Virus record (IMG/VR): IMGVR_UViG_3300028676_000003
Location: 124,001-188,000 of that record
Direction: 5' to 3' (one strand)
DNA: 64,000 nucleotides
The position numbers were made by a program, and so were the translations under genes. The notes below the pieces were generated by a model that saw only the letters and a list, made by a program, of their open reading frames with translations, ran no database searches and was not told where the DNA came from. The stretch's first letter is position 1. Each line of letters begins with the position of its first letter. Of the stretch, positions 12,501 to 35,275 are shown in pieces.

Positions 12501-13307
12501 GGTGACCAAGATTCATATGAAGACCTTATGCGTATGGAAGATAAAGAAATTAAGTTTTGGGATAAGGTTGATAAGGTTCCAAATAACATGGAAGAACACG
12601 TTTGGGCCGAGCTTAGAATTGATTATCATGAAAGAATGGTAATTGCTAAGATTGAAGGTGTTGAACGAGAAAAAGAAGTTATGGATGATATCATCAAACA
12701 CTTAGAAGTTAGTGACTTAGAAGGTGCAATGAGAGGTGAATTACCACTAGATGTATTTGTCATGGCTGATATGGCTGACGATGATTCAGGTGCGATTGTT
12801 TCTAGAAAATTTGGAGAAGTACTATGTTATTTCGATGAATTATTTAAATACGAATCTGATGCTATTAGACGTAATGAATTTTACCATCTTAATGGAAATC
12901 TAAATGATGCTATCGACAGATACGAACAATGGTTAGATTACAACGCAGAAAACATTGTAATGACTGGTTCAACAGTTGAAACAAGCGGACAAATGGAATT
13001 ATTCTCAGATTCTGATATTGATTCCGTAATCAAGAGAGTTAAGGTAAAAAGCAAGACAGCTACTAAGAAATCAATAGCTATGCTTAATGCTGAGAAAGCT
13101 GAACCTAAAAAGAAAGCTAGTGAAGATGAAGATGATGAAGAAGTTGTTTTTATTCTTGACGCTAACGGACAATTGGTTAGAAAAGATGAAATATTACAAT
13201 TGGATGACGAATTCGATGATACCTTTGGAGATATGCCTGAAGGATATGTTGTTTATGAAGCACCAATTACTCCAAAAGAACCTGAAAAGGACGAGTGGGG
13301 ATTTTAA
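9528..13307 (+). CDS. Family B DNA polymerase with 3'-5' exonuclease
   Basis: Exo motifs YDLETEG, GYNSEDFDWP, YLCDD. Polymerase motifs LDYAALYP (A), KILANSWFGSYG (B), VGDTDG (C). Confidence 0.95.
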   Translation: MSQTKTKVDNLVIEKFLEGTDPQKYIVGVEAVYDKPIVTLVINDRDTDTKYLEEHRYKPFLWFKEDITTVIYGGSKTKIREAAARHGIKMVKLRTANDDGFTPVRLQNGYKFLATCTKSYNELINFFKFGGVDPFSKEYQKNFVMFSPTEQFLIQTGKRLFKGIDDYNDVHRFQYDLETEGLFADSHAIFQIGVRDNRGFEGVLETVGARTQALIEQEREAKDEITKLAIRAELELIKDTPQELREAERQNIKKFFEIIDAVKPDIITGYNSEDFDWPFLFKRAERLGISITELAITLNRASKIKRKEASLKLGGETQKYQQTHMYGYSIIDISHAVRRAMAINSEIKGWGLKYITQYSEIAKPNRVYVPGDKINTTWRDKKNEYAFNNENGDWYKITAKAPLKEKYSKVKGAYIVQRYLCDDLWETEQIDTIFNQASFLISKILPTSFQRSSTMGTAGQWKLIMSAWSYENGLAIPELQQKREFTGGLSRLLEVGFAKNVYKLDYAALYPKTQLTHFIFPDLDISGVMEGMLTYVVDSRDKFKFLTGVEKKTYKALEGKLKAEKANMTDAEIEELTERIAKHKALSNLYDKKQLPLKILANSWFGSYGAPYIFNWGDSDSAEETTCRGRQYLRLMVKHFYEKYKFRPLVGDTDGFNFAAPDNLEEITYLAKGTHWKTEDDANKLLVGIDAVLAEFNETYMEGRMGLDLDDVCSSTINFARKNYANDIGGKIKLVGNSVKSKKMSVYIEEFLGKGIRMLLDGDGHSFINYYYEYVDKIYNYQIPLVKIASKARVKTTATEYAKKATQKNKAGNPMPKQAHMELALKDGLGINLGDTLYYVNTGLMKSHGDLKTETNKATGLKTVTLNCKLINPDTVEKDFELIKELEILKKGLLVLEEAESEAKKDIEDRIQEIENSLVTDEYNVARYLDNFNKKVKPLLVCFNEEVRGKVLLDIVKVKNKETKKTTDTLKQRVIFSPYECELISGIPFKEGDQDSYEDLMRMEDKEIKFWDKVDKVPNNMEEHVWAELRIDYHERMVIAKIEGVEREKEVMDDIIKHLEVSDLEGAMRGELPLDVFVMADMADDDSGAIVSRKFGEVLCYFDELFKYESDAIRRNEFYHLNGNLNDAIDRYEQWLDYNAENIVMTGSTVETSGQMELFSDSDIDSVIKRVKVKSKTATKKSIAMLNAEKAEPKKKASEDEDDEEVVFILDANGQLVRKDEILQLDDEFDDTFGDMPEGYVVYEAPITPKEPEKDEWGF

Positions 13308-14523: not shown

Positions 14524-14778
14524 TTAAGCTAAAAACTTCTTTGTTAATTCCACAGCCTCATCTATCGAGTGAAACGATACATTAGGGATAAATAATTGCT
14601 TACCAATCTTTACAACTGGCACTTCGTTAGAATTGCTTGCTACAACAACCTTACCATATTCTTCAGCATTTTCAGCCAAGTTAACGTTTATATCATTATA
14701 TTCGATACCTTCAGCTGTTAGCTTTTCTTTTAATTCCTTACAAAAAGGACACTCAGGGAATGTATAAATTATTACCAT
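14524..14778 (-). CDS. Glutaredoxin/NrdH-like redoxin
   Basis: IYTFPECPFC (CxxC) and VPVVKIG cis-Pro motif, 84 aa. Confidence 0.88.
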   Translation of the reverse strand: MVIIYTFPECPFCKELKEKLTAEGIEYNDINVNLAENAEEYGKVVVASNSNEVPVVKIGKQLFIPNVSFHSIDEAVELTKKFLA

Positions 14779-16619
14779 TACTCTTCTATTAATTCGTTAA
14801 TTAAGATTTCTGTTAATTCTTCATCTGAAGGACGCTTGTCACCCATGATTGTTGAAATAACATCTTTTTTATTATTAAGCATTAACCACATACGACTTGA
14901 AATTGTATCATCAAATAGTTGGTAGTAAACGTTTACGTTATTTTTTTGTCCGATACGGAAAGCTCTATCTTCAGCTTGTTCATTATTCCCAGGCACCCAA
15001 TCAAATGAGTTAAACACAACAACCGTTCCTTCAGTAAGTGTAATACCAACACCCGCTGACTTAATATTCCCTACAAATACCTTAACCTTGTCATTTTGTT
15101 GGAAAGCATCGACAGATTTTTGTTTTTGAATAGTAGACATAGGCCCGTTGTGTTTAACCGCTTGTTTTCCGAAGTGGTTAGCAATCATTTCTAATTCTTC
15201 AGTAAAGCTTGTAAATACAATAACCTTTCTTCCCATTTCAATAGCATTCTCAACCATTTCAATTGTTTGTGGAATAGCTTGTATCGCAATGAATTGTCTA
15301 AGGAGAATTAGTTCAACTAAATCCTTTTGAGATTCAACACTACGCTTTCCTTCAAGCTTACGCTTCAGCATATATTCATCCCAAAGCAACTCATATTGTT
15401 TAAGACCTTTTTTATCAAGTAAATGGTGCATCGGTGTGATAACCTTATCAGGCATATCAAGAACTTCAGTTTTTAAACGTCTTAGAATGATGTTTTTTGT
15501 TTTAGAAGCTAATTCTTCTAAGTTGCTGGCACCATCGGTAAGCCATATCTGCTTTTTAACACCATTTTTAAGCGTTCTAAAGAACTGTCTTCCGTCACAG
15601 TACCTTAGAGCGTAGTGCTTCCAATTCTCTGCAATAGGAGACTTTATAATCTTTAATAGATTAAAGAAGTCCATTGGTCTGTTTGCAACTGGTGTTCCAG
15701 TAAGAAGCCAAGTCTTATTTATTCCGTATTTGTTAGTCAATTCAACCATAATCTTTCCACGGATGCTTTCATTGTTTTTAAGGTAGTGAGCCTCATCAAT
15801 GATACATAGGTCAAATCCAGCTTCAGCTAATTGTCTGTTGATTACTTCTTCAGGTTCACCTTCTTTTTTCTTTGTTGTTTTAGCTAGAGTATGGAAATTT
15901 TTAAGAATATCAAAATTAATGATAACAAATTTAGCATCTGACCATTTTTTACCATCAATAATTGTTGTATCATCACAAAAAACGTTAATTTCACGTTCCC
16001 AATTTATCTTCGTTGCCGAAGGACAAACAATTAGAATCTTCTTAGCTCCACTTTCAAGGGCCGCAATGATGGATTGAATACTCTTTCCAAGACCCATATC
16101 ATCTGCAAGAATACAACCATTTCTAGCTAAAAGGAACTTGATTCCTTCCTCTTGGTGTTGATAGAGTTTTTTACCGTCTTTAGCCAATACATTATTGTAA
16201 GGTGTGAAGTCTACATCAATGTTGATTGGTTCAAAGTAAGGGTCATCAAGAACCTGAGTCTTTGCGAGCCAATACATTTTAGAAACCGTTTGGTTTTGTT
16301 TCAGCTTCCCATAAACGTGAAATGCTTTTTCAGTTTCACCCAAGATAAATTCAATTAGAACCTTTTGTGGTGTAAAAGCTACATTATCTGCTTTTTGTAA
16401 TTCAAGTCCTAGGTATTCAGTTATTCCAACTACTCGGTTAACGAATATTGGTTGTCTGTTATGGTTATCAATAATGTACTTTGATTGGTTTTCAGTCAAA
16501 GGTATTTTTTTATTTTTCAAATAAGCATTTTTAAGCTTTATAAGGTACGGATTTATCCCTTCGTAACCCTCAAGTAGCGCAACTGCTGATTGTGACTTTA
16601 AATCGTTTAATGTTATCAA
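14778..16619 (-). CDS. SNF2-family (SF2) helicase/translocase
   Basis: LADDMGLGKS, IIDEAH, LTGTP, GVGITL, QAEDRAFRIGQ. Starts with TTG. Confidence 0.92.
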   Translation of the reverse strand: MITLNDLKSQSAVALLEGYEGINPYLIKLKNAYLKNKKIPLTENQSKYIIDNHNRQPIFVNRVVGITEYLGLELQKADNVAFTPQKVLIEFILGETEKAFHVYGKLKQNQTVSKMYWLAKTQVLDDPYFEPINIDVDFTPYNNVLAKDGKKLYQHQEEGIKFLLARNGCILADDMGLGKSIQSIIAALESGAKKILIVCPSATKINWEREINVFCDDTTIIDGKKWSDAKFVIINFDILKNFHTLAKTTKKKEGEPEEVINRQLAEAGFDLCIIDEAHYLKNNESIRGKIMVELTNKYGINKTWLLTGTPVANRPMDFFNLLKIIKSPIAENWKHYALRYCDGRQFFRTLKNGVKKQIWLTDGASNLEELASKTKNIILRRLKTEVLDMPDKVITPMHHLLDKKGLKQYELLWDEYMLKRKLEGKRSVESQKDLVELILLRQFIAIQAIPQTIEMVENAIEMGRKVIVFTSFTEELEMIANHFGKQAVKHNGPMSTIQKQKSVDAFQQNDKVKVFVGNIKSAGVGITLTEGTVVVFNSFDWVPGNNEQAEDRAFRIGQKNNVNVYYQLFDDTISSRMWLMLNNKKDVISTIMGDKRPSDEELTEILINELIEE

Positions 16620-20677: not shown

Positions 20678-23512
20678 ATGTCAACAAAAGTATTTGTAAG
20701 TCCTGGGGTTTATACATCAGAAAAAGACTTAACTTTTATTACACGTCAAGTAGGGGTAACTCAACTTGGTTTGGTGGGTGAGACTACAATCGGTCCAGCT
20801 TTCCAACCAATCTTCATTAGCAACTACGGTGAATTCCAATCATTCTTTGGTGGCCTAAACGCTACTAAGGTTAAAGATACTGGTGCGCCTCAATATGAAT
20901 TACCTTATATTGCCAAATCATATTTAACTCAAGCAAATCAATTATTCGTAACAAGAGTATTAGGTTTCTCAGGTTACTATGCTGGTAAAGCATGGGGTAT
21001 TACTCTTGATGCCGCTGTAGATACTACAACCGTTGCACCTACAGGTGGAAGTAACGTAGCAAACATCATAACATACTCAACAACATCTGCTGGAACAAGT
21101 ACATTTACATCGGCTAGTCCTATTGTAACTGCGCTTTTAGCTGATAACTTGATACAAGACCAATTACAATACATTTCTTTATTGAATGTAGGTCAAACAG
21201 GTAGTGTTACAACAACATTTATTAAAACTGGAAACTCATTTACTGGTGCTTCATTCAACTATATCATTACCGCTACTGGTAGTACTGGTAGTACTTTAAC
21301 AGGTGTTGCTTCAGGTGTAACTGTAACTTATTCAGGTACAGGTTATACAGATGTTGAAAACCAATTGGTTGCGTTATTACGTTCAAGAGGTACAACAGAC
21401 TTAGCTACACAATTTCCAGCATTTGAGGTAACTGGTGCTACTGGTGTTATCTTCGACCCAGCATTTACTGATTCTGAAATGAATCCATTAGGAGATTTCT
21501 CTTTAAGTGGTTTCTCTCAAACTCAAGGTGCTTTTGATAACTTGGTATCTTTAGATAGAACTAAAAAGAATTACTTACCAAGAGTTCTTGGTAGAAGCGT
21601 TCAAAATGGTAATACACCATTATACCTTGAAGAATTCTACAACAGTATGTTCGAAGAACTTGTTGCTGAAGGAAAAGTAAGAGGACTTAAACAAACAATC
21701 GTTAGTTATAATAATGAATTCTCTGATTACCAACAACAATACTCGCCAGCGGTTACACCTTATGTTGTATCTGAGTTACGTGGTACAAAGGTGTTGAAAT
21801 TATTCAGATTCCATACAATTTCTGATGGTAATGCGGCTAATGAGCAATTCAAAATCTCATTCGTTAACATTAAACCTGATACAAGAGAGTTTGACGTAAT
21901 CATTAGAAGCTACTACGATAGTGATGCTTCACCAACAGTATTAGAAAGCTTTAGCCGTTGTACAATGGACCCAAATTCTAATAACTATATTGGTAGAAGA
22001 ATTGGTACACTTGATGGTTTATATCCTTCTAAATCAACTTACGTTCTTATAGAAATGGATGATACATCTGATACAAGTGATGCATTCCCAGCTGGTTTCA
22101 TTGGATTCCCAATTAGAGACTACCAAGAGAATAGCAACACAAGTGTTGTAGCTCCAAAATTAACATACAAAACTGCTTATGGTGCTTTTGAAAACAAACG
22201 TAAATTCTATTTAGGTTTATCTGAGACAATTGGTATTGATGCTGATTTCTTCGATTACAAAGGTGTACCACAAACAAATAATCCAAACGTTTGGACTGGA
22301 ATGACTAACGGTTTCCACATGGATATCGATGCTACTGGTGCAACAATTGACAACGTTAACGTTGTTATAAATACTTCAGGTGGAACTTACTCTCCTATAT
22401 TCTTATTCGACACAGGTGATGCTGAGTTTAGAACTGAATCAGGACTTGCTGGTGGACCATATGAAAAAATCTACGCTCGTAAATTTACATTCGCACCTTA
22501 TGGTGGATTTGATGGATGGGATGTTTACAGAACTAGAAGAAGTAATCTTGATAGCTACATAATCAATGGTACCAACGGTGCTAACGGTTTAACTTCAGGT
22601 GCATTTAGTAACAAAGCTTTATCTAATGGAGACATGGGTATTACATCTGATTACTATGCGTTTTTAGAGGCTATTTGGACATTCAGAAACCCTGAAGCGA
22701 TTAACATTAACGTGTTTGCTACACCTGGGATTGATAATTTCGATAATACTAACTTAATTGAAGATACTATCGAGATGATTGAAGAAGAAAGAGCGGATTC
22801 ACTTTACATCATGACAACACCTGATTTAAACACTGGTGGAGATGTGATGAGTGTTGAAGATGTTACTGACTATTTAGATGGTATGTACGATAGTAACTAT
22901 TCTTGTACATATTGGCCTTGGGTACAAATCAACGATACTGAAAATAACGTGTTTATCTACGTTCCACCAACAAGAGATGTTGTAAGAAATATTGCCTTAA
23001 CTGATAATGTTTCATTCCCTTGGTTTGCGGTTGCGGGTATTCAACGTGGTGATGTTGATGCGGTTCAAGCTAGAAAGAAATTAACACTTTCTGAAAGAGA
23101 TGAATTGTATGAAAACAGAATTAATCCGATTGCTACATTTACATCTGATGGTATCAAAATTTGGGGTAATAAAACACTTCAAGTTAGAGAATCTGCTCTT
23201 AATAGAATCAACGTAAGAAGACTTTTATTACAAGCAAGAAAACTTATCTCTGCTGTATCTATTAGATTGTTATTTGAACAAAATGATAACGTGGTTAGAA
23301 ACCAATTCTTATCTATAGTTACTCCTATCTTGGATAACATTAGAAGCGAAAGAGGTTTAACAGATTTCCGTGTGGTTCTTTCAAACGACCCTGAAGATAT
23401 CGACAGAAACCAATTAACTGGTCAAATATTCTTGAAACCAACAAGAGCCCTAGAATTTATTCAATTAGAGTTCGTAATCATGAATACAGGTGCTTCATTT
23501 GATAATGTATAA
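20678..23512 (+). CDS. Tail sheath protein (T4 gp18-like)
   Basis: N-terminal VSPGVYTSEKD. C-terminal YWPW, VPPT, PWFAVAG.QRG, LYENRINPI, IWGNKTL, RINVRRL, KPTRALEFI. Confidence 0.95.
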   Translation: MSTKVFVSPGVYTSEKDLTFITRQVGVTQLGLVGETTIGPAFQPIFISNYGEFQSFFGGLNATKVKDTGAPQYELPYIAKSYLTQANQLFVTRVLGFSGYYAGKAWGITLDAAVDTTTVAPTGGSNVANIITYSTTSAGTSTFTSASPIVTALLADNLIQDQLQYISLLNVGQTGSVTTTFIKTGNSFTGASFNYIITATGSTGSTLTGVASGVTVTYSGTGYTDVENQLVALLRSRGTTDLATQFPAFEVTGATGVIFDPAFTDSEMNPLGDFSLSGFSQTQGAFDNLVSLDRTKKNYLPRVLGRSVQNGNTPLYLEEFYNSMFEELVAEGKVRGLKQTIVSYNNEFSDYQQQYSPAVTPYVVSELRGTKVLKLFRFHTISDGNAANEQFKISFVNIKPDTREFDVIIRSYYDSDASPTVLESFSRCTMDPNSNNYIGRRIGTLDGLYPSKSTYVLIEMDDTSDTSDAFPAGFIGFPIRDYQENSNTSVVAPKLTYKTAYGAFENKRKFYLGLSETIGIDADFFDYKGVPQTNNPNVWTGMTNGFHMDIDATGATIDNVNVVINTSGGTYSPIFLFDTGDAEFRTESGLAGGPYEKIYARKFTFAPYGGFDGWDVYRTRRSNLDSYIINGTNGANGLTSGAFSNKALSNGDMGITSDYYAFLEAIWTFRNPEAININVFATPGIDNFDNTNLIEDTIEMIEEERADSLYIMTTPDLNTGGDVMSVEDVTDYLDGMYDSNYSCTYWPWVQINDTENNVFIYVPPTRDVVRNIALTDNVSFPWFAVAGIQRGDVDAVQARKKLTLSERDELYENRINPIATFTSDGIKIWGNKTLQVRESALNRINVRRLLLQARKLISAVSIRLLFEQNDNVVRNQFLSIVTPILDNIRSERGLTDFRVVLSNDPEDIDRNQLTGQIFLKPTRALEFIQLEFVIMNTGASFDNV

Positions 23513-26601: not shown

Positions 26602-26632
26602 AAAAATGCCCGCAGAAATGTGGGTATTTTTT
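26602..26632 (+). terminator. Intrinsic terminator after the chaperone pair
   Basis: AAAAATGCCCGC-AGAAAT-GTGGGTATTTTT, with G-U pairs. Confidence 0.7.
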
Positions 26633-26665
26633 ATTTAATATGATATTTATAAACAAAGATTAATC

Positions 26666-28144
26666 ATGAATAATAAAAAACTTAAGATAACTGAAGCACA
26701 ATACAATAGACTACTACAGTTTATTGTTGAAACTCCTTTTGACACAATGGTTAAACAAAGTATCGATATAGGTGATGTTGTTTCTATTAATTGGAAAGGT
26801 AGTAAGAATAATTTCAAGGTAATTGATAATTCAGGTGGGCAAATCATTATGGATAACATCGATAAAGGTTCAACCAACATCAACAATAGATACTTCATGA
26901 GCTTTACATCGTTGAATGGTGATGACCTAGAGATGAGAAAGGTAAACAAGGTTAAAGAACCTGAAAAACTTAACGATATCAAGTCATGGTCACCAGTAAC
27001 TGTTAAAGATATTTCAAACATACAAATCTTCAGAGACGGTGAATTAATTGATACGGTTGACCCAGTTTCTCCTACTGCTGAAAAACAACAAAAAAATGGT
27101 CCAAAACCTGATACAAACACAGATAATAACCCAAGTCCTGACTTCATGAATGAGGTTAATAACGACTTGGCTATTATTCTTGAACAATTGGAAAAAGGAA
27201 AAGGAATCAATTTTATATTTAATTCAGGGTTTATTAATTTCTGTTGCTTAGATAGAGTTGATTCTACATTTATCTTAGAAATTAATGAAGAACAAAATAC
27301 AATCATCGATAGTCTTAATAAATGGGACACCTTCATTTTGGATATCAAGGGTAATCCTCAAACAGATAACCTATATCTTAAAAACAAAGACATTGTTTCA
27401 ACTAATGATGGAGTAACTTATAACCTTAAATTCAAGGTTTCAGCTGGAAATACACACAAAGAGACTGTTATAAAAGCAATCAAAGGTGTTAGTGTTTTGA
27501 GCTCTTGTGATACAACTGAAGAAGATGAAGATGAGAAACCTGAAGTAAATGGCCCTGAAGAACAGAAAGCGGATGCTGAAAAGGCACTACAAATGATTCT
27601 TAAGGATAAAGATTTACAAGATGCGTTTTATAAACAACCTGGATTTTGGGAGATGTTTAAAGCTGAACTTTCAGGTGAAAAAGCTGTTGGTACTGGTATA
27701 ATTACCGTATTAGACGTTATGCGTAAAGTAACTGAATCTAGACTTGTTAAAAAGGTAGGTAAAGGGTTTAATGTTGGTAAAAAAGCCAAGTTTATTCCTA
27801 TTGAAAACGTTAACGTTAAGTATCGTGATGATAAAGATATAATCCATAATTATGACCTTCCAATGGTTGAAGATATGATTACGGTTAGAAGACACCTTAT
27901 CGATGATGTTAGTCAAGTTTTACAAAAAAGAGTTGAGGGTGGAAATGGACTAATTCTAAGAATCCTAGTTAAAGACCAAACAGACGAACCAAATATCAAG
28001 AATTGTGATGTTCAGATTGGTATTAAAAATAAAAGCGATAAATTCGTTGAGAAGGGACAAACATCAGATGTTAACATAAAATTCTTAAATTCAGAAGGTT
28101 ATGAAGCACAAGTTCAACAACCACAAACACAAAATACTAACTAA
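26666..28144 (+). CDS. Hypothetical protein (492 aa) with KLKITxxQY N-terminal motif
   Basis: TATTTATA 14 nt upstream. SH3/KOW-like IDIGDVVSINWKG segment. Stop overlaps the tape-measure start. Confidence 0.65.
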   Translation: MNNKKLKITEAQYNRLLQFIVETPFDTMVKQSIDIGDVVSINWKGSKNNFKVIDNSGGQIIMDNIDKGSTNINNRYFMSFTSLNGDDLEMRKVNKVKEPEKLNDIKSWSPVTVKDISNIQIFRDGELIDTVDPVSPTAEKQQKNGPKPDTNTDNNPSPDFMNEVNNDLAIILEQLEKGKGINFIFNSGFINFCCLDRVDSTFILEINEEQNTIIDSLNKWDTFILDIKGNPQTDNLYLKNKDIVSTNDGVTYNLKFKVSAGNTHKETVIKAIKGVSVLSSCDTTEEDEDEKPEVNGPEEQKADAEKALQMILKDKDLQDAFYKQPGFWEMFKAELSGEKAVGTGIITVLDVMRKVTESRLVKKVGKGFNVGKKAKFIPIENVNVKYRDDKDIIHNYDLPMVEDMITVRRHLIDDVSQVLQKRVEGGNGLILRILVKDQTDEPNIKNCDVQIGIKNKSDKFVEKGQTSDVNIKFLNSEGYEAQVQQPQTQNTN

Positions 28145-30633
28145 TGGCAGATACATCAAATATGAGTCAAGACGAGTTAAATGCGCATAACAGATTAGTC
28201 GCAGAGGCTCTTAAACTCGCAAAACAAGAAGCTAGATATAGAAAAGAAGTTAGCACCAGTCTTGCTGATTATTTAGCTGGTGTTGAGAAGGCAAATAAGA
28301 TGAAAAAAACTTATAATGCCAACTTAAAAATTCAATCTAAATTTGAGAAAGAATTAGAAAAAGCACAGCAAGATAATGATGCTCAAGCTATTCTTAATGC
28401 TCAAGTTAAGCTAGACCTTATAAAGAAACAAAATAAAGAACTTAAGAAACAACAAGAAGCTCTAGAAGACGCTTTGGCAACTGTTAATAAGACTTCTATG
28501 GTTACTGCCAAGTTAGGTGCTGAAGCTTTAAAAGGTATCGCAAAGCTTGCAACAAACATCCCAGGTCTTATCACCAAGGGTTACGGTCAAATCAAGAGTG
28601 CTGGTTTATTCGATATGGATAAAGCCATTAAGCAATCAGGTTTAAGTATGGGTCTTTTATCTAAACAAACTAGTGATTATAGAGCTAATATTACTGCGGC
28701 CGCTAAAAGAACAACTACCTTTGGTATTGGAATTGAAGAACTTGCTCAAATGCAAGCTAGTTATTCTGAAGAATTAGGTAGAGCTGTTGTTTTAACTGAA
28801 CAAGAAAGCGTTGCTATGGCTAAGATTGCCGCTGATGCTCAATTGAGTACCGAAGCAATGGGTCAAATGACTGCTGAATTAGATAGACAAGGTGTTTCTG
28901 CTGAAAGAACTGCTGACTATATTCACAAGGTTATGGAAGACACCCATAAAATGGGTCTTAATTCATCTAAGGTTATTAAGAATATCAATGCTAATTTCAA
29001 GATGCTTAATAGATATAACTTCAAAAATGGAGTTGATGGACTAGCTAAAATGGCCCAAACAGTATCTAAATTAGGTGTTTCTATGGAATTTGCCGCTGGT
29101 TTTGCAGATAAGTTATGGGATGTTGAAGGAGCTGTTGATATGTCTGCACAATTACAAGTATTAGGTGGTGAATGGTCTAAGTTAGCGGACCCATTCAAGC
29201 TTATGTATCAAGCTCGTAATGATATTGAAGGATTGACTGAAGAATTAGGTAAAGCCGCATCGGCTTCTGCTCACTTGAATAAAAAAGGTGAAATAGAAAT
29301 TGCCGCTGTTGAAATGCATAAATTAAAAATCATTGCTCAACAAACTGGTGTTGCATATGATGAGTTAGCTCAAGCTGGTAAAAATGCATTCAAGTTGAAT
29401 AAGATTAAAGGTCAAGTTCAATTCCAAATGTCTGATGAAGAAAAAGAATTCCTTACAAATCAAGCTCACTTAGATAAAGACGGAAAAGCCTATATCGTAG
29501 TTAAAGGTGATAAGAAATTCCTTGGACAATTAGGAGCTAATGCTCAAAGTATTGTTAAGGCCCAAATGGAAGAACAAAAAGCTATGGGTGAAAGAGCTAA
29601 GGATGCTCAAACATTTGATGAGGCGTTGAATAATACAATCAACGGTATGAAGGTTTATTTGCTTCCAATCATTACAGCTATAAACGAAAAATTACTTCCT
29701 AAATTGAAAGATTTTGGTGATAGATTCGAAAACGAAAAATGGGGTGATAAAATAGAGAAATTTGCTGGTATTGTTGGTGACTTGGTTACTACCATCGGTG
29801 GATTTATTATTGATAACCCAATCAAAACTGGTCTTATTTATCTTACAACTAAATTAGGTGGTTTCCTTATGGATAAAGCTACTTGGTTTAGTAATGGTCT
29901 TATACTTGCACAAGGATTTAACGCTGGGTCTGCTGGTGGTGGAGCCGCAAGTGCTGTAGCTGGTGGTGTCGGTAAATTTGCTAAGTTAGGTAAGTTTGCT
30001 AAGATTGGTGGTGGTGTAATTGCCGCTGGTGCTAGTGGATATGATGAATGGACAACCAATAAAGAAAATGGAGTTGAAGCTGGTGAAAACGCTGGCCGTA
30101 CTGCTATTAGAGCAGGGGGTGCTGGTTTAGGAGCATGGGGTGGTGCGGCCGCAGGTGCCGCATTGGGTTCTGTTGTTCCAGTTATCGGTACAGTTGTTGG
30201 TGGGATTATTGGTGGTATCTTAGGTGGACTTGCTGGTGATAAACTAGGTGATATGGGTGGTGATGCCGCTTATGGTGTTCACGATGGTAAATTCCCTGCA
30301 ATTGGTAAGAACTTAGGTAGCGATTTTTCTCAAGGTAGAGGAATTATTCAAGGTGGAAAAATTACACCTATTGATAATAAAGATGACCTTATGGCAATGA
30401 AACGTGGTGGTCCAGTCGATAATGCGTTGAGAGATGGTGGTGGAAGTGTGAACACTACTAGAGTTGATTTTGGTTCTATTACAATCAATGGTGAAATCTT
30501 GATTAAATCTCCTGGAAGTCCAGGTATGTCTGAAGACCTTATGAAGGACCCTTCATTTAGACGTGATATCACAAGAACAATCCAAGTTGAATTAGAGAAA
30601 AATAAAATTGGTGGAAAAAATAAAGGTCAATAA
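28144..30633 (+). CDS. Tail tape measure protein
   Basis: 829 aa, Ala/Lys/Glu-rich helical sequence with Gly-rich hydrophobic C-terminal segments, downstream of tube and chaperones. Confidence 0.8.
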   Translation: MADTSNMSQDELNAHNRLVAEALKLAKQEARYRKEVSTSLADYLAGVEKANKMKKTYNANLKIQSKFEKELEKAQQDNDAQAILNAQVKLDLIKKQNKELKKQQEALEDALATVNKTSMVTAKLGAEALKGIAKLATNIPGLITKGYGQIKSAGLFDMDKAIKQSGLSMGLLSKQTSDYRANITAAAKRTTTFGIGIEELAQMQASYSEELGRAVVLTEQESVAMAKIAADAQLSTEAMGQMTAELDRQGVSAERTADYIHKVMEDTHKMGLNSSKVIKNINANFKMLNRYNFKNGVDGLAKMAQTVSKLGVSMEFAAGFADKLWDVEGAVDMSAQLQVLGGEWSKLADPFKLMYQARNDIEGLTEELGKAASASAHLNKKGEIEIAAVEMHKLKIIAQQTGVAYDELAQAGKNAFKLNKIKGQVQFQMSDEEKEFLTNQAHLDKDGKAYIVVKGDKKFLGQLGANAQSIVKAQMEEQKAMGERAKDAQTFDEALNNTINGMKVYLLPIITAINEKLLPKLKDFGDRFENEKWGDKIEKFAGIVGDLVTTIGGFIIDNPIKTGLIYLTTKLGGFLMDKATWFSNGLILAQGFNAGSAGGGAASAVAGGVGKFAKLGKFAKIGGGVIAAGASGYDEWTTNKENGVEAGENAGRTAIRAGGAGLGAWGGAAAGAALGSVVPVIGTVVGGIIGGILGGLAGDKLGDMGGDAAYGVHDGKFPAIGKNLGSDFSQGRGIIQGGKITPIDNKDDLMAMKRGGPVDNALRDGGGSVNTTRVDFGSITINGEILIKSPGSPGMSEDLMKDPSFRRDITRTIQVELEKNKIGGKNKGQ

Positions 30634-30687
30634 TCGTTGAAAATCAATCATTTGATAAATTCTTTAGAAAAAATCTTTTACACTTAC

Positions 30688-30718
30688 TTGACAATGTCGA
30701 AAAAAAACCGTATATTTG
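30688..30718 (+). promoter_or_regulatory. Strong host-type promoter with no adjacent ORF
   Basis: TTGACA-N17-TATATT, which is also TTG-N20-TATATTTG. Confidence 0.75.
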
Positions 30719-30720
30719 TC

Positions 30721-30820
30721 TAAATTAAATAATAATATAAAAAATTAATATTAATAAATAAATTATAATAATTAAAATATTTAAATATATAATATAACCT
30801 AATATTATATATAATAATTA
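30721..30820. other. Extremely AT-rich tract (candidate DNA-unwinding element or sRNA body)
   Basis: 100 nt with only two C and no G. 77 consecutive A/T (30721-30797). No ATG. Confidence 0.8.
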
Positions 30821-30845
30821 AAAGGCACTAATTGTGTCTTTTTTT
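30820..30845 (+). terminator. Intrinsic terminator closing the AT tract
   Basis: AAAAGGCAC-TAATT-GTGTCTTTT followed by T run. Confidence 0.7.
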
Positions 30846-30891
30846 ATTTGGTCTAAAACCATTTATTTTTATAAAAATTCAAGTACTATAG

Positions 30892-30907
30892 TATTTATAT
30901 ATAAATA
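30892..30907. promoter_or_regulatory. Late-type motif in tail-to-tail palindrome
   Basis: TATTTATATATAAATA, identical to 41973-41988, 7 nt before ATG 30915. Confidence 0.55.
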
Positions 30908-30914
30908 AGTTACT

Positions 30915-33900
30915 ATGCAAAATTTTTATAACTCTTCTAAACCAAGTCCTACTACTAGAAACACTATTAACAGTGTAAGTATAGATATTAGAGATTATCT
31001 TTTAACGAAGAATTTAAAACCACAATACCCACAATTATCAACGACACTTAACGGTGCTCCTAAGATTGGTGAACCAGTTGTTGATACAACTATTGGTGAG
31101 AACGCTGTATTGGTTCCAATTGGTCTTCCATTGGAAACCGAAGGTATTTCATTTAAAAATAAGAACATCTCAACTAATCAATTTAAAAATGATGTTCAAA
31201 TTGCTGATGAACTTAAGAACATTGACCTATCAACGAAAGATGTAAATAAAGACTACCCTCAAGCAGTTTGGCCTCAAGGAACACAAAAATATCCTAATTC
31301 AGCTACTGAAGAAGTTACAAAGTATGGACTTATTGGAAAAACAGATGAAGCAGGATATCGTAAAAGAAATACAATCAAGAACTTATATCTAGATGCTGAT
31401 AAACAAATAGATATTTCAACTTTCATTGATTTAAACCCTACAGATACTACTCAACAAATAAAAGGATATTTAGACACTTATGGTGGTTTAAATACTGGAA
31501 ATGGTGGAGCAACAAAAGCAATCAATATCATTGGTAGCGTACTAAACGGACAAGGTTTAGGTATAGCTAAGGGTGGTGTTGTGACTAACTATGATGTTAG
31601 AGCAACGTTAGTTGGTAGAGTTCTTGGAGCAACAGGTTTCATCAACGATACAAAGCTTGGAACAATCGGTGGACAGCAATTAGCACTAGCATTGGCAAAC
31701 AATGCGGCATTTAATGTTCAACAAGATATTTTAGGGTCCTTCAATGTTACTGATAACATGATGAGCCTTGTTAAAAATGGTACACTTGCTGGATTTAGGT
31801 CAGATTATACTATTACAAAACCTTCAAGTACAGGTGGACAAATTGCTGATTATACTTCAAGAATCCTAGGATTCACACTACCTAAGAGTTATTTAGATGA
31901 TTCAGGGTCTATTTTCCAAAGTGAAAATAACAACGCTGAAAATGTAACTAGAGCCAACGCAATGATTCTAAATACTGGTAAGGGTCAAAATCAAGCCCTT
32001 TTAACGAACGTTAATGCGAATTTGATAGGGATTAGTCCATCAGGTATAGATAATCCTTCTAACTCGTCATTTAGGGTTGGTTATGCACCAGCATATACAA
32101 ACAACAACGGTGAGGTACAAATTACCAATGGAGTTATCTATGCTTTCTCAAATCAAGGTAAAACAATATCTCTATTTGGTTCAGACGATAATATCATTCC
32201 AAACTTGTCTTATAACAGAGAACAAAAGGTTCAAGCTTCAGGTTTTGAGGCTCCTGAAGACTTATTCTTTGTAGGACACAAATCAAACCCAGGTTATTCT
32301 GACCGTAAAATCAGTGACGTTACCTTCTCATGGGGTACTGAGATTGGTGGTAAGGTAAATTCAGATGCTAATTATTATCCATTTAGTGGTGATAAGAAAA
32401 GTCTTCTTGCTAAAACTCAAAAGCTTTTCAACAGTAAAGGTATGTTGAATATCGTTACAGCCAAAGGTGATATGGACAAGACTTCAACACAAATACAACA
32501 AGCTAACGGTAATGGTTTCTCTAAGGGTAGCCAAGTACTTAAAGCTGATTTATACGATGATAATGGACGTTATAACAACGCAACTGGTAAAACAGCTGAC
32601 GAAACATATTGCCGTAGTTGGACTACGCTTGACAGATATGATTCTGTTAATAATCTTATTAGAAAACACGGACTTTGGAAATCTCCAACGGTTCCATATA
32701 GATTCAATACTGAAAACTCAGTATTAGATGAGTATGGAATACCTAAGATTGCACCATATACAACAGATAAACCTGAAGACCCTAAGAAATTTATGTTCTC
32801 AATTGAGAACTTAGCTTGGGCCGATGAGAGTTCATATGCAAACCTACCACAATCAGAACGTGGACCAGGAGACCTTATCTCAGGTAAAAGAGGTCGTATC
32901 ATGTGGTTCCCGCCTTATAATATTAATTTCACAGAAAATAGTAGTGTAAATTGGGATTCTAATAATTTCATTGGTCGTGGAGAACCATTATACACATACA
33001 ATAACACCGAAAGAACAGGTACACTTTCTTTCCAAGTAATTGTTGACCATCCTAGTTATGCAAATTCATTTAGAGGTGTTAACGGACCCGATGATAACTA
33101 TATTGCTTCATTTTGGGCTGGATGTGTTGACCCTAGTAGTGAAATATCTAAAAAATTAACACCAAGTCAAGTAAGTTCACTTGTAGTTGAGTCTTTAACG
33201 GTTCAAGAACCTAAAAAGATTACTAGTGAGCCAACACCTGATGATATGGTTGTTTATTTCCCTAATGATAATGCTAATATTCCAGCAACATATGAAAATG
33301 GGTTAAGTGGTGCAACAACTGCTAATACAATCAATTATAATGTATCTGCAACTGGTTTAGGTTTCGGATTAGGCTCTTATCCAAGTAACTTCACCCCAGG
33401 TGTCACAAGTGCTTGGCCTGATAGATATAACTTCGGTTTAAACTACAAAGGTGAAAGAGCTCCTGTTTCTAATGTTGATGGTGTGCCTTATTATGGTTAT
33501 TTTGACCCAAGATACGACCAAGCTATTGTTAATTTCTTGAATACCAAGTGTAAGTATTGTGTAGTTGAGGTAACTGGTTATGCCAGCCCACAAGGTTCTG
33601 CACCATATAATCAAAAATTAGCTAACGCTAGAGCCAAGGCTATCCGTGATGAGTTAAGAGATACGAAATGGGGACCATTATTAACAGATAAAAGAAATTT
33701 TGATAAGAGATTTAAAACAATGCCAAGCATCGCTTTGACAAATACTCAGTGTATTCCTAACCATGGTGAAGATACTGATACTATTTGGTGTAAATTAGAT
33801 AGAAAAGCTGTTATTCATTTCAGATTTAGTCCTGAATTAGCAGCGGCCGACTATGCGAAAGCAACACCTGTTATTAAAAAATCATCTAAAACTGTTAATA

Positions 33901-34940
33901 CGCTTATAACAAATAAATTCTATGATGAATCTAAGTATTTTGACCAATTGGTTAATGATGATGCTTTTGTTTTTGATAGATTTAGAGATAAAATTAAGTA
34001 TTTTCACCCAGCGTTCCACTCAACAACACCTGAAGGGTTGAATTCTAGACTTACATTCTTATTGCAATGTACAAGACAAGGACCAACTTCAGAGGACCAA
34101 GGGGCAAATAACTTGGCATTCGGTAGACCGCCAGTTTGTATTTTAAGAATTGGAGATTTTTATAATACTAAGATTGTAATCGATAATATTGGAATTGATT
34201 ATGAGCCGTTGGTATGGGATTTAAACCCTGAAGGTATTGGAGTTCAGCCAATGATTGCGAATGTTAACATGTCGTTTAAATTTATCGGTGGTTCAACACT
34301 TATGGGTCCAATCAACAAGTTACAAAATGCGTTATCATTTAACTATTTCGCTAATACACAAGTGTATGACCCAAGAGCTGATTATATTGCTAAGACAGAT
34401 TTAACTGTTACTAAAAAATATAAAAAGAGTGATGGAACTGAAGTATCAGAAACAAACCCTGTTTATAAAATTAGCAATGGACAAGTTGATATTTCAAATC
34501 CTGAAACTGCGATTACACCTGATGTTATTGCTGATAATACACCTGAAGTAAATCAAACAGCGGCCGCAGAGCAAGCAATTAGTGGAACAACAGCACAAGA
34601 TGCTCAACCGCCAGCGGGTACATCGGCTACAACTAACAATGACATTTATGTTTATGTTACTGGTGATAGAACAACAGATGCTTATAATGGAACAATTGAT
34701 ATTAAATTGGTAACACCAGCACTGGCTGATTCTTACGATATGAAGGTTAGCATTTTTGATGCAACAAATAAGAGAGTTGAAATAGGTGTTGGACGTGTTG
34801 ATAAAACCAAGATGGAACAATCATACACTTATCCAATAAACCTAACAAGTAGTAACTTTAAGTTTTCTACAACAAATGCATATGTGATTAGAATCGATTT
34901 TATCGGTTACAAATCATTTAATATAACAAAAGAATTTTAA
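30915..34940 (+). CDS. Baseplate/tail-tube-initiator-like protein (gp48/gp54-like domains) with internal OmpA-like domain
   Basis: Two tube-like segments (WFPPYNINFTENSSVNW...GRGEPLYTY; GRPPVCILRIGDFYNTK) flank VEVTGYASPQG...YNQKLANARAKAIRDEL. Confidence 0.55.
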   Translation: MQNFYNSSKPSPTTRNTINSVSIDIRDYLLTKNLKPQYPQLSTTLNGAPKIGEPVVDTTIGENAVLVPIGLPLETEGISFKNKNISTNQFKNDVQIADELKNIDLSTKDVNKDYPQAVWPQGTQKYPNSATEEVTKYGLIGKTDEAGYRKRNTIKNLYLDADKQIDISTFIDLNPTDTTQQIKGYLDTYGGLNTGNGGATKAINIIGSVLNGQGLGIAKGGVVTNYDVRATLVGRVLGATGFINDTKLGTIGGQQLALALANNAAFNVQQDILGSFNVTDNMMSLVKNGTLAGFRSDYTITKPSSTGGQIADYTSRILGFTLPKSYLDDSGSIFQSENNNAENVTRANAMILNTGKGQNQALLTNVNANLIGISPSGIDNPSNSSFRVGYAPAYTNNNGEVQITNGVIYAFSNQGKTISLFGSDDNIIPNLSYNREQKVQASGFEAPEDLFFVGHKSNPGYSDRKISDVTFSWGTEIGGKVNSDANYYPFSGDKKSLLAKTQKLFNSKGMLNIVTAKGDMDKTSTQIQQANGNGFSKGSQVLKADLYDDNGRYNNATGKTADETYCRSWTTLDRYDSVNNLIRKHGLWKSPTVPYRFNTENSVLDEYGIPKIAPYTTDKPEDPKKFMFSIENLAWADESSYANLPQSERGPGDLISGKRGRIMWFPPYNINFTENSSVNWDSNNFIGRGEPLYTYNNTERTGTLSFQVIVDHPSYANSFRGVNGPDDNYIASFWAGCVDPSSEISKKLTPSQVSSLVVESLTVQEPKKITSEPTPDDMVVYFPNDNANIPATYENGLSGATTANTINYNVSATGLGFGLGSYPSNFTPGVTSAWPDRYNFGLNYKGERAPVSNVDGVPYYGYFDPRYDQAIVNFLNTKCKYCVVEVTGYASPQGSAPYNQKLANARAKAIRDELRDTKWGPLLTDKRNFDKRFKTMPSIALTNTQCIPNHGEDTDTIWCKLDRKAVIHFRFSPELAAADYAKATPVIKKSSKTVNTLITNKFYDESKYFDQLVNDDAFVFDRFRDKIKYFHPAFHSTTPEGLNSRLTFLLQCTRQGPTSEDQGANNLAFGRPPVCILRIGDFYNTKIVIDNIGIDYEPLVWDLNPEGIGVQPMIANVNMSFKFIGGSTLMGPINKLQNALSFNYFANTQVYDPRADYIAKTDLTVTKKYKKSDGTEVSETNPVYKISNGQVDISNPETAITPDVIADNTPEVNQTAAAEQAISGTTAQDAQPPAGTSATTNNDIYVYVTGDRTTDAYNGTIDIKLVTPALADSYDMKVSIFDATNKRVEIGVGRVDKTKMEQSYTYPINLTSSNFKFSTTNAYVIRIDFIGYKSFNITKEF

Positions 34941-34954
34941 TAAAAATATAAAGA

Positions 34955-35275
34955 ATGGCTAGTTATTTCGATAGATACGGAAGCTTTAGAGTTAATGCGG
35001 GTATGAAAACAATACCTGGAATCCAGGTCCCACAACTCGACTCAGATAAGAACATGGTTTATAAACAAGGTGTCTCTAGACTTGACAAATTGAGTCTTAT
35101 GTATTATAATAACCCTTACAGTGGTTGGTTAATTATGTTAGCCAACCCTGAATTTGGTGGTTTGGAGTTTAATATTCCTGATATGGCCCTGATTAGAATC
35201 CCATTTCCATTTGAGAGTGCGGTTTCTAGATATATAACACAAGTAACGAATCATAAAGCACTATATGGCGAATAA
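34955..35275 (+). CDS. LysM-like baseplate wedge protein (T4 gp53 / tail X-like)
   Basis: RLDKLSLMYYNNPYSGWLIMLANP...LIRIP. Confidence 0.75.
   Translation: MASYFDRYGSFRVNAGMKTIPGIQVPQLDSDKNMVYKQGVSRLDKLSLMYYNNPYSGWLIMLANPEFGGLEFNIPDMALIRIPFPFESAVSRYITQVTNHKALYGE

What the first reader, a model, noticed from the sequence alone, without database searches (positions are those of the whole stretch)
30688..30845. Orphan host-type promoter, 100-bp 98% AT tract and terminator: candidate R-loop replication origin or AU-rich sRNA
Seen: a consensus promoter (TTG-N20-TATATTTG, also TTGACA-N17-TATATT) fires into 77 consecutive A/T bases (100 nt with 2 C and 0 G), followed by a hairpin and T tract. The unit has no start codon and sits between two late tail genes. 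Known: T4 origins consist of a promoter plus a downstream DNA-unwinding element, where the transcript forms a priming R-loop. Inference: this is either a transcription-primed origin or a ~120-nt AU-rich RNA, for example a decoy for a host RNA- or AT-DNA-binding protein.
Basis: partly seen in the sequence, partly recalled or inferred. Interest (0 to 1): 0.68.

Follow-up and report, generated by a model that had tools for sequence, protein, structure and literature searches.

The report
Conserved promoter, A/T tract, terminator unit
Between the tape-measure and baseplate-hub genes of a 369-kb uncultured jumbo phage of Bacteroidota sits a short unit with no gene in it: a consensus host promoter firing into the most easily melted 100 bp of the genome, then a terminator. 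The unit is kept in dozens of distant relatives and is most likely a transcription-activated replication origin, or else a gene for an A/U-only RNA.

Summary

**What is there**
- TTG-N20-TATATTTG (also TTGACA-N17-TATATT) lies at 30688-30718.
- A 77-nt pure A/T run follows; over 103 nt there are 2 C and 0 G.
- A GC hairpin with a T tract follows at 30820-30849.

**Why it is not chance or artefact**
- The run is the longest A/T run, and the least stable duplex, in the whole 368,549-bp genome.
- An independent peat assembly carries it unchanged.
- About 45 of 56 non-redundant related phage contigs (hub protein 41-66% identical) have the same unit at the same junction. Promoter, tract composition and tract length (median 88 nt, 97.7% A/T) are kept. 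The tract sequence is not kept. Terminator stems covary.
- The promoter, including its A-run spacer, matches the full sigma-A consensus that drives tRNA and housekeeping genes in Bacteroidales.
- The hub gene has its own conserved upstream motif, so the unit stands alone.
- A relative's complete genome has exactly one such tract. This genome has a second, paralogous copy.

**Reading**
- Best reading: a promoter plus DNA-unwinding element of the T4 oriF/oriG type (about 0.37).
- Rivals: an A/U-only small RNA, or an empty expression cassette; one subclade holds a gene in it.
- No transcript or replication data exist.

The parts
30637..30647 (+). Palindrome TTGAAAATCAA (family consensus TTGAT(T/A)ATCAA), just after the tape-measure stop codon (30631-30633). 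Candidate site for a dimeric DNA-binding protein.
   Evidence: Found in 27 of 46 relatives that have the promoter. Its distance to the -33 TTG is 49-51, 38-40 or 60-61 nt, steps of about one helical turn. The extended form GTTGA-WWW-TCAA occurs only twice in the genome. Function is inferred.
30688..30718 (+). Bacteroidota sigma-A promoter: -33 TTGACA (30688-30693), A-run spacer ATGTCGAAAAAAAACCG, -7 box TATATTTG (30711-30718). Predicted transcription start near 30723.
   Evidence: 166 sites in the genome fit TTG-N17-21-TAnnTTTG, and the median distance from the -7 box to an ATG is 28 nt. Orthologous promoters, spacer included, are present in about 45 of 56 relatives. The same full consensus drives tRNA and housekeeping genes in Bacteroidales genomes. 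In Flavobacterium psychrophilum the -7 box spans -12 to -5 (PMC9723704), which places the start near 30723. The start is inferred, not measured.
30719..30823 (+). A/T tract: 77-nt pure A/T run at 30721-30797, then CC, then 24 more A/T. It is rich in alternating TA/AT steps, is about 60% A on the transcribed-sense strand, and has no start codon.
   Evidence: Longest A/T run and lowest duplex stability in the genome. In 30 relatives the length from the -7 box to the hairpin has a median of 88.5 nt (IQR 83-92), with a median of 97.7% A/T and A/(A+T) of 0.60. Sequence is not conserved and often consists of short tandem repeats. There is no helical periodicity. The RNA is not more structured than shuffles (z = +0.23).
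30785..30812 (+). 11-bp A/U inverted repeat ATATATAATAT-AACCTA-ATATTATATAT inside the tract.
   Evidence: It is the centroid structure. Such repeats are expected by chance in low-complexity A/T sequence (z = 0.23). No significance is claimed.
30820..30849 (+). Intrinsic terminator: stem GGCAC/GTGTC (one G-U pair) with A/T extensions, loop TAATT, then TTTTTTTATTT. It ends the unit, giving a predicted RNA of about 120-127 nt, and probably also ends the tape-measure transcript.
   Evidence: With the hairpin included, folding gives z = -2.5. In 26 relatives, 5 of 6 stem pairs show compensatory double changes. A clear hairpin with a T run is present in about 85% of relatives that have the module.
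30860..30908 (+). Conserved two-part motif CATTTATTTT (30860-30869)-N22-TATTTATATATAAATAA (30892-30908), 6 nt before the hub ATG (30915). Likely the hub gene's own, phage-specific promoter.
   Evidence: Invariant blocks with constant 22-nt spacing in the three-lineage alignment. TTTATTT-N18-28-TATTTATA is present in 46 of 52 non-redundant relatives. Its promoter role is inferred. Within this genome the motif is not enriched upstream of genes beyond a reversed-motif control.
28144..30633 (+). Upstream gene: tail tape measure protein (829 aa).
   Evidence: PHROG 167, E 7.7e-18.
30915..34940 (+). Downstream gene: 1341-aa tail protein with an OmpA-like peptidoglycan-binding domain, taken as the baseplate hub from its position after the tape measure. 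It was used as the anchor to find relatives.
   Evidence: Pfam OmpA, 27.9 bits against a cut-off of 27.2. 73 related loci were found.

Best explanation
The unit is a conserved, self-contained early transcription unit whose working part is the DNA. A near-consensus host sigma-A promoter fires into about 100 bp of almost pure A/T, the most easily unwound duplex in the genome. In negatively supercoiled DNA the nascent A-rich RNA would stay paired with the template in this unwinding element. That opens the duplex and offers an RNA 3' end and a displaced strand to the phage replisome; a family-B polymerase and a helicase are encoded 14-21 kb upstream. This is the promoter-plus-DUE logic of T4 oriF/oriG and, from my own knowledge, of the T7 primary origin. 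The terminator caps the unit so that early host-polymerase transcription does not run into the late hub and baseplate genes. The upstream palindrome would be a site for a regulator or initiator.

Shown: the promoter match, the extreme and unique A/T tract, the terminator, and conservation of architecture without conservation of sequence.

Inferred: that the promoter fires, that an R-loop forms, and that DNA synthesis starts here.
For: 1. The architecture matches the defining parts of T4 oriF/oriG. [quoted passage not shown]
2. Across at least 27 distinct orthologous tracts, composition (median 97.7% A/T) and length (IQR 83-92 nt) are held while sequence is free and microsatellite-like.
3. The tract is the genome-wide minimum of duplex stability (z up to 5.7). 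It is enriched in the weakest steps: TA+AT make up 62% of steps against 48% expected.
4. It is unique, as expected of a cis-acting site. It is the only 100-nt window of at least 93% A/T in the complete 362-kb relative G001, and one of two in this genome. The other is a paralogous promoter plus tract.
5. The RNA itself shows no selected structure (z = +0.23) and no conserved sequence. This argues against a specific RNA fold or a base-pairing target.
6. The empty module is ancestral. It is present in all three deep clades of the hub tree, which shows long-term selection on a unit that codes for nothing.
7. The palindrome lies at helically phased distances upstream.
8. The sense strand is A-rich (0.59 against 0.556 in other non-coding DNA), the polarity that would favour an RNA-DNA hybrid. 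The excess is slight.
Against: - There is no direct evidence of transcription, an R-loop or initiation. No RNA run holds the phage, and only contigs were available, so no depth profile could be made.
- Cumulative GC skew shows no inflection at 154.7 kb. The test is weak because nearly all genes are co-directional.
- Known promoter-plus-DUE origins do not carry a terminator straight after the DUE.
- The narrow length range and the terminator fit a discrete RNA product just as well.
- U-rich RNA-DNA hybrids are intrinsically weak.
- The same promoter and tract serve as a plain 5' leader for protein genes in one subclade. Copy B also lies upstream of a gene.
- A distant complete relative (G003) has no such module.
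- No T4 gp59-type loader was found, but that search was uninformative because the control rang nowhere.
Confidence: 0.37

Rival explanations
1. It is a gene for a small A/U-only RNA of about 120-127 nt that acts through its composition. It would be made in large amounts by host polymerase early in infection and stabilised by the terminator hairpin. It would soak up a host factor that prefers single-stranded A/U-rich RNA, such as ribosomal protein S1 or the 30S subunit in a phylum that does not use Shine-Dalgarno pairing, an A/U-cutting ribonuclease, or a defence RNase.
For: - The promoter is of the full-consensus class that host genomes place in front of tRNAs and other highly expressed genes, which suggests high output.
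- The terminator is conserved with covariation in most relatives.
- The distance from promoter to terminator is narrow (IQR 83-92 nt), as for a product of defined size.
- Near-total exclusion of G and C keeps the RNA unstructured.
- T-T steps are more depleted than A-A steps, as if internal U tracts that could end transcription early were avoided.
- Bacteroidota start translation without Shine-Dalgarno pairing (PMC6847099, abstract). That they rely on unstructured A-rich leaders is from my own knowledge.
Against: - No RNA data exist and there is no Rfam match.
- No known phage sRNA is A/U-only.
- About 7 relatives keep the promoter and tract but lack a terminator, so no defined 3' end would form there.
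- Copy B has no terminator.
- G and C counts are about equal (36 against 53), which gives no strong RNA-level asymmetry.
- From my own knowledge, most Bacteroidota lack Hfq and ProQ, which removes the classic partners.
Confidence: 0.25
2. It is an accessory-gene ('moron'-like) expression cassette that is empty in this genome. It consists of a strong host promoter, a long unstructured A/U leader suited to Shine-Dalgarno-independent translation, a slot for a cargo gene, and a terminator. The short RNA made here would be a by-product, or the promoter would give low early read-through into the hub gene.
For: - In L028 and L069 the orthologous promoter and a 70-85-nt A/T tract run directly into the ATG of a gene of about 200 aa with UVR-like repeats. 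The terminator and the hub motif follow.
- L026, L050 and L053 carry the same cargo gene.
- Copy B in this genome precedes a 103-aa ORF.
- The junction is an insertion hot spot: a TnpB-like gene in L015-L017 and reverse-strand genes in L045 and L063.
- About 7 relatives lack the terminator, so the promoter reads into the hub gene.
Against: - Cargo is confined to one nested subclade, while the empty unit occurs in all three deep clades. Empty is therefore ancestral, and it has been kept at consensus quality for a long time, which a useless remnant would not be.
- L023, nested among cargo-bearing relatives, has no cargo but a 127-nt A/T microsatellite tract.
- Normal leaders in this phage are about 20-40 nt.
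- Copy B's gene has its own proximal TTG-N20-TATCTTTG promoter, so there too the promoter and tract are an extra upstream module.
Confidence: 0.15
3. It is a DNA-level regulatory or architectural site unrelated to initiation. Examples are a bendable or meltable upstream element, or a protein landing pad (the palindrome plus the A/T tract) that controls the adjacent hub promoter, or a site for a nucleoid-type or packaging protein.
For: - The palindrome is conserved and helically phased.
- The terminator end lies at a constant 80-92 nt from the hub ATG.
- The hub motif lies at a constant distance downstream.
- The tract is enriched in flexible TA steps.
Against: - There is no A-tract phasing or 10-11-bp periodicity.
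- This reading does not explain why a consensus promoter pointing into the tract is conserved.
- Copy B lacks both the palindrome and the hub-type motif.
Confidence: 0.13
4. It is neutral low-complexity A/T DNA, expanded by slippage in a tolerant intergenic gap, that happens to lie beside a promoter-like match.
For: - The tracts are microsatellite-like and differ between relatives.
- In the 10-kb promoter scan, consensus-like matches were no more frequent than in shuffles (35 found against 42 expected).
Against: - The promoter is conserved at the same place, spacer included, in about 45 of 56 diverged relatives.
- Tract length and purity are held within narrow limits.
- The site is unique in two complete genomes.
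Confidence: 0.03

Closest known systems
Bacteriophage T4 oriF (ori(uvsY)) and oriG (ori(34)): promoter plus downstream A+T-rich DNA unwinding element, initiating through an R-loop
   Same: A promoter active before late transcription fires into a unit of about 100 bp whose A+T-rich part works through its unwinding property, not its sequence (PMC3016281). oriG also lies in a late tail-fibre gene region. T4 has several such origins, and this genome has two copies of the module.
   Different: The promoter is a host sigma-A (Bacteroidota -33/-7) type, not MotA-dependent. The tract is longer and purer (about 100 bp, 98% A/T). An intrinsic terminator follows at once. A phased palindrome lies upstream. 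No gp59 homologue was detected. No functional evidence exists.
Bacteriophage T7 primary origin: promoters followed by a 61-bp A/T-rich cluster
   Same: Promoters sit directly upstream of an A/T-rich cluster where RNA-primed synthesis begins. The cluster is cited in PMC12839067. The tandem phi1.1A/B promoters are from my own knowledge.
   Different: T7 uses its own single-subunit polymerase. Here the promoter is of host type, and the phage encodes sigma factors rather than a polymerase of its own as far as tested.
Bacteroidota sigma-A promoters (TTG at -33, TAnnTTTG at -7)
   Same: Exact match to both boxes and their spacing. The A-run spacer also matches the extended consensus found upstream of tRNA and housekeeping genes in Bacteroidales genomes (PMC9723704).
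   Different: It drives no gene here. The leader is about 8 times the usual length and is A/U-only.
Phage 'morons': accessory genes with their own promoter and terminator, inserted between late genes
   Same: The unit has its own promoter and terminator between two tail genes, and one subclade of relatives holds a cargo gene in it.
   Different: There is no ORF in this genome or in most relatives. The empty state is ancestral and conserved.

Membership tests
Bacteroidota sigma-A promoter | TTG near -33 and TAnnTTTG near -7, separated by about 19-21 nt | tested here: met
   TTG 30688-30690, N20, TATATTTG 30711-30718. The genome holds 166 sites of this form.
Bacteroidota sigma-A promoter | The same extended sequence is used in front of real genes in Bacteroidota genomes | tested here: met
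All 80 listed are Bacteroidales. They lie upstream of tRNAs (9) and of ORFs at a median distance of 58 nt.
Bacteroidota sigma-A promoter | A mapped transcription start about 5 nt after the -7 box | not testable with these tools
   No RNA run holds the phage.
T4 oriF/oriG-type origin (promoter + DUE) | A promoter directed into the element | tested here: met
T4 oriF/oriG-type origin (promoter + DUE) | An A+T-rich, easily unwound element immediately downstream that works independently of its sequence | tested here: met
   Genome-wide minimum of duplex stability. Composition and length are conserved, sequence is not.
T4 oriF/oriG-type origin (promoter + DUE) | A persistent R-loop in the DUE | not testable with these tools
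   Needs footprinting or S9.6 assays.
T4 oriF/oriG-type origin (promoter + DUE) | DNA synthesis starts there (autonomous replication, nascent strands, depth maximum) | not testable with these tools
   Only Logan contigs were available, and their depth is flat.
T4 oriF/oriG-type origin (promoter + DUE) | A shift in strand compositional bias at the site (seen at some T4 origins, not all) | tested here: not met
   No GC-skew inflection at 154.7 kb. The test is confounded by co-directional genes and is not a required feature (PMC3016281).
T4 oriF/oriG-type origin (promoter + DUE) | T4-type helper proteins (gp59 loader) | tested here: inconclusive
   PF08993 gave no match, but it rang in no control genome either. 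A PolB and a helicase are present.
Intrinsic (Rho-independent) terminator | A GC-rich hairpin followed by a U tract | tested here: met
   30820-30849. MFE -18.4 kcal/mol, z = -2.5.
Intrinsic (Rho-independent) terminator | The stem is maintained by compensatory changes | tested here: met
   5 of 6 pairs show double changes among 26 relatives.
Described RNA family (Rfam 15) | A match at or above a family's gathering score | tested here: not met
   None in the window. The best weak hit was E = 0.6.
Phage moron / accessory expression cassette | Own promoter and own terminator between late genes | tested here: met
Phage moron / accessory expression cassette | A cargo ORF between the promoter and the terminator | tested here: not met
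   There is no start codon in 30719-30823. Cargo is present only in the subclade L026, L028, L050, L053 and L069.

The most novel reading that the evidence does not exclude
The unit encodes a new kind of phage RNA that works purely through its composition. It would be an abundant, unstructured A/U-only transcript of about 120 nt, made from a tRNA-grade host promoter in the first minutes of infection. It would titrate a host factor that binds or cuts A/U-rich single-stranded RNA. In Bacteroidota that could be S1-dependent mRNA recruitment, or an A/U-specific defence or decay nuclease. A variant of this reading is that the RNA 3' end in an R-loop serves as the loading point for a replication-coupled activator of the late promoter about 50 bp downstream.
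Probability: 0.2. Interest if true: 0.85.

Novelty: new variant of a known kind. Interest (0 to 1): 0.6.

Why it matters
No replication origin or regulatory RNA has been described for this clade of Bacteroidota jumbo phages, as far as my searches reached. The clade has no match in the collection of deposited phage genomes.

This unit gives a precise, clade-wide, 160-bp candidate that can be tested on plasmids without growing the phage. The tests are promoter strength, R-loop formation, and A/U-leader effects in Flavobacterium or Bacteroides.

- If it is an origin, it extends the T4/T7 rule of promoter plus unwinding element to a distant phage group. It also gives a way to find origins in metagenomic phage genomes: look for the genome-wide stability minimum just downstream of a consensus host promoter.
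- If it is an RNA, it would be a sequence-free, composition-defined decoy.

It also shows that conservation of composition and length without conservation of sequence can flag functional non-coding DNA.

Tried and rejected
- **Deposited phage genomes.** Megablast of 29800-31800 and tblastn of the hub protein found no match, so no cultured relative and no prior annotation exist.
- **Rfam.** Nothing at gathering score. The one weak hit (STnc40, E = 0.6) covers the terminator and is chance.
- **GC skew.** Cumulative GC and AT skew over the whole genome show no turn at the site, but the test is confounded by gene direction.
- **Curved DNA.** I looked for A-tract phasing or a helical period in 27 tracts and found none.
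- **Selected RNA fold.** The tract folds no better than shuffles. The 11-bp A/U inverted repeat is within chance.
- **Second copies in relatives.** A pattern search in four large relatives, and whole-genome A/T scans of G001 and G003, found only ordinary promoters. Copy B is specific to this lineage.
- **TATTTATA(A/T)A as a genome-wide late-promoter class.** 12 of 26 sites precede ORFs, but a reversed-motif control gives 9 of 24. I claim only the orthologous conservation at the hub gene.
- **T4 gp59 loader.** The search was uninformative.
- **The conserved spacer as a special operator.** Rejected as the main reading, because the same spacer is part of the general strong-promoter consensus in Bacteroidales genomes.
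- **RNA evidence.** 20 runs hold the DNA (peat, soil, freshwater, groundwater) and none is RNA.
- **Not used.** The large protein searches, structure prediction and complex prediction were not needed.

Full report
**Setting.** The window is bases 124,001-188,000 of a 368,549-bp IMG/VR virus record with 33.6% G+C, rated complete by CheckV. The genome carries:
- a family-B DNA polymerase (window 9528-13307) and a helicase (14778-16619, minus strand);
- a tail sheath (20678-23512), so it is a contractile-tailed jumbo phage;
- three sigma-70-family genes and about 62 tRNA genes.

It has no match among 50,697 deposited phage genomes, by DNA or by protein. Its DNA turns up mostly in peat metagenomes.

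- The sequence at 30688-30718 is TTGACA-N17-TATATT, and equally TTG-N20-TATATTTG.
- The 77-nt A/T run at 30721-30797 is the longest in the genome. 30721-30823 holds two C and no G.
- Only two places in the genome reach 93% A/T over 100 nt: this one at 98%, and a paralogue.
- By nearest-neighbour energies the tract is the least stable duplex in the genome at 50, 80 and 100 bp (z = 4.8-5.7). The paralogue comes second.
- The hairpin and T tract at 30820-30849 are real.
- The tract is not an assembly artefact. A contig from a different peat sample spans 30567-30950 without a difference, and another IMG/VR contig is identical.

**The host is a member of the Bacteroidota, and the promoter is of the strongest host class.** The genome holds 166 sites of the form TTG-N17-21-TAnnTTTG. 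Three quarters lie on the gene strand, and the median distance from the -7 box to an ATG is 28 nt. This is the Bacteroidota sigma-A signature; in Flavobacterium psychrophilum the -7 box spans -12 to -5 (PMC9723704). That places the start near 30723.

At first the A-run spacer (ATGTCGAAAAAAAACCG) looked like a special conserved site. A scan of bacterial genomes showed otherwise. TTGnnnATGTCAAAAAAAAGCAGTAnnTTTG is a common full consensus in Bacteroidales and Paludibacteraceae, upstream of tRNAs and housekeeping genes. It also occurs in unrelated Bacteroidota phage contigs. So the element carries a near-optimal host promoter.

**Conservation.** The downstream 1341-aa tail protein found 73 related viral contigs, 41-66% identical. 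About 45 of 56 non-redundant loci show the same layout:
1. the tape-measure stop codon;
2. often a palindrome, TTGAT(T/A)ATCAA;
3. the promoter;
4. a nearly pure A/T tract;
5. a GC hairpin and T run;
6. CATTTATTTT-N22-TAGTATTTATATA;
7. the hub ATG.

The numbers behind this:
- In the 30 loci that passed a strict parser, tract length has a median of 88.5 nt (IQR 83-92).
- A/T content has a median of 97.7%, and A/(A+T) is 0.60.
- The sequences do not align and are often short tandem repeats.
- TA and AT steps are enriched, 62% against 48% expected. There is no helical period.
- Terminator stems differ between lineages (GGCAC/GTGCC, GGCGCG/TGCGCC, GCCC/GGGC, GGTGCT/AGTACC and others). 5 of 6 pairs show compensatory changes.
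- The palindrome lies 49-51, 38-40 or 60-61 nt before the -33 TTG in 27 of 46 loci, steps of one helical turn.

**The unit stands alone, and the empty state is ancestral.** The hub gene keeps its own two-part motif in 46 of 52 relatives. The upstream promoter is therefore not simply the hub's promoter.

On a tree of the hub protein, the unit without any ORF occurs in all three deep clades. A quick IQ-TREE search was used because the careful search did not finish; L079 sits on a long branch, and near-duplicate loci were left out. A cargo gene of about 200 aa with UVR-like repeats, lying between the tract and the terminator, is confined to one nested subclade. Three loci carry other insertions.

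A complete 362-kb relative (G001) has exactly one extreme A/T window, and it is at this junction. A distant complete relative (G003) has none.

This genome has a second copy at 365,989-366,100:
- the promoter is 29 of 34 identical, spacer included;
- it is followed by a 48-nt A/T run;
- it has no terminator;
- then come a second TTG-N20-TATCTTTG promoter and a 103-aa ORF.

**What it most likely does.** Three points are firm:
- a consensus early promoter fires into the most meltable DNA of the genome;
- selection holds the composition and length of that DNA but not its sequence;
- a terminator caps it.

This is the logic of T4 oriF/oriG. There a minimal sequence of about 100 bp holds a promoter and an A+T-rich unwinding element, the transcript forms a persistent R-loop, and the DUE can be swapped for any heterologous unwinding element (PMC3016281; PMC4412123). 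T7 also has an A/T-rich cluster at its origin (PMC12839067).

I put this reading at about 0.37. The RNA shows no selected fold (z = +0.23) and has no Rfam relative. That speaks against a specific RNA structure or a base-pairing target, but not against an RNA that acts through its composition.

**The rivals.**
- *An A/U-only sRNA (0.25).* It is favoured by the tRNA-grade promoter, the covarying terminator and the narrow size range. It is weakened by relatives, and by copy B, that lack a terminator.
- *An empty expression cassette (0.15).* It is directly supported by the cargo-bearing subclade and by copy B. It does not explain why the empty state was held at consensus quality through deep divergence.
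- *A DNA architectural or regulatory site (0.13).*
- *Neutral slippage DNA (0.03).*

**Limits.**
- No RNA runs exist, and only contigs could be laid on the stretch, so transcription and replication could not be tested.
- GC skew shows no turn at the site, but nearly all genes point one way.
- The gp59 search had no working control.

**Verdict.** The feature is real, conserved and unique. It is a new variant of the promoter-plus-unwinding-element design, with its function unproven. Interest 0.6.

Noticed in passing
Genome 365,989-366,130 (outside the window; L002:1519-1660): A paralogous second module. The promoter ACTTGCAAATGTCGAAAAAAATCCGTACCTTTGT is 29 of 34 identical, spacer included. A 48-nt A/T run follows, the second-least-stable duplex in the genome. 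There is no terminator. Then come a second TTG-N20-TATCTTTG promoter and a 103-aa ORF of unknown function.
   Followed up: partly
Window 30637-30647: The palindrome TTGAAAATCAA (family consensus TTGAT(T/A)ATCAA) lies at helically phased distances (about 39, 49 or 60 nt) upstream of the -33 box in 27 of 46 relatives. It looks like a site for a dimeric DNA-binding protein, which is unknown.
   Followed up: partly
L015-L017, L045, L063, L026, L028, L050, L053, L069 (upstream of the hub gene): The junction between tape measure and hub is an insertion hot spot. L015-L017 carry a TnpB-like (IS605-type) ORF. L045 and L063 carry reverse-strand genes that split the unit from the hub gene; in L045 the first hub codons are duplicated. 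One subclade carries a cargo gene with UVR-like repeats.
   Followed up: partly
L131-L137, L154; L143, L152, L158, L159, L164: The same full-consensus promoter occurs in unrelated, higher-GC Bacteroidota phage contigs. There it is followed by about 200 nt of GC-rich, hairpin-rich sequence with its own terminator, and in three representatives scanned (L132, L143, L158) it has no Rfam match. These may be undescribed phage non-coding RNAs.
   Followed up: partly
Genome 224,978-301,038 (outside the window): About 62 tRNA genes lie in arrays behind TTGACTT...GTACCTTTG promoters. One at 228,804-228,879 has a CUA anticodon (an amber-suppressor type), and several have odd anticodon loops. ORFs in the window read intact under code 11.
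   Followed up: no
Whole genome; window 7167, 9433/9498, 40958, 43088, 43170: There seem to be two flavours of the -7 box. GTACCTTTG (46 exact sites) is concentrated at 217-368 kb and 0-20 kb. TAT(A/C)TTTG is used by this element and a dozen other sites, one of them at 204,467, about 200 nt upstream of a sigma-70 domain match at 204,666. With three phage sigma genes present, these may be temporal classes.
   Followed up: no
Relatives' contigs (table): About 13 of 73 related contigs end less than 1 kb upstream of the hub gene. By my rough estimate that is about four times the number expected if contigs broke at random. Assemblies probably break at the extreme A/T tract through coverage bias or low complexity.
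   Followed up: no
L042:1290-1440: A tandem duplication of an A/T segment together with its terminator (GGGTAC...GTGCTC plus T run, twice) lies within the orthologous unit.
   Followed up: no
Window 35082-35110: A perfect 12 of 12 E. coli-type TTGACA-N17-TATAAT match lies inside the 106-aa ORF (34955-35275), near the start of the 1888-aa gene. It has no TTTG, so it is not of the Bacteroidota type and is probably chance.
   Followed up: no
Window 26602-26665: A strong terminator (13-bp stem plus T run, 26602-26631) is followed by TATTTATAAA 12 nt before the ATG at 26666. This is the same terminator-then-motif punctuation as at the hub gene.
   Followed up: no
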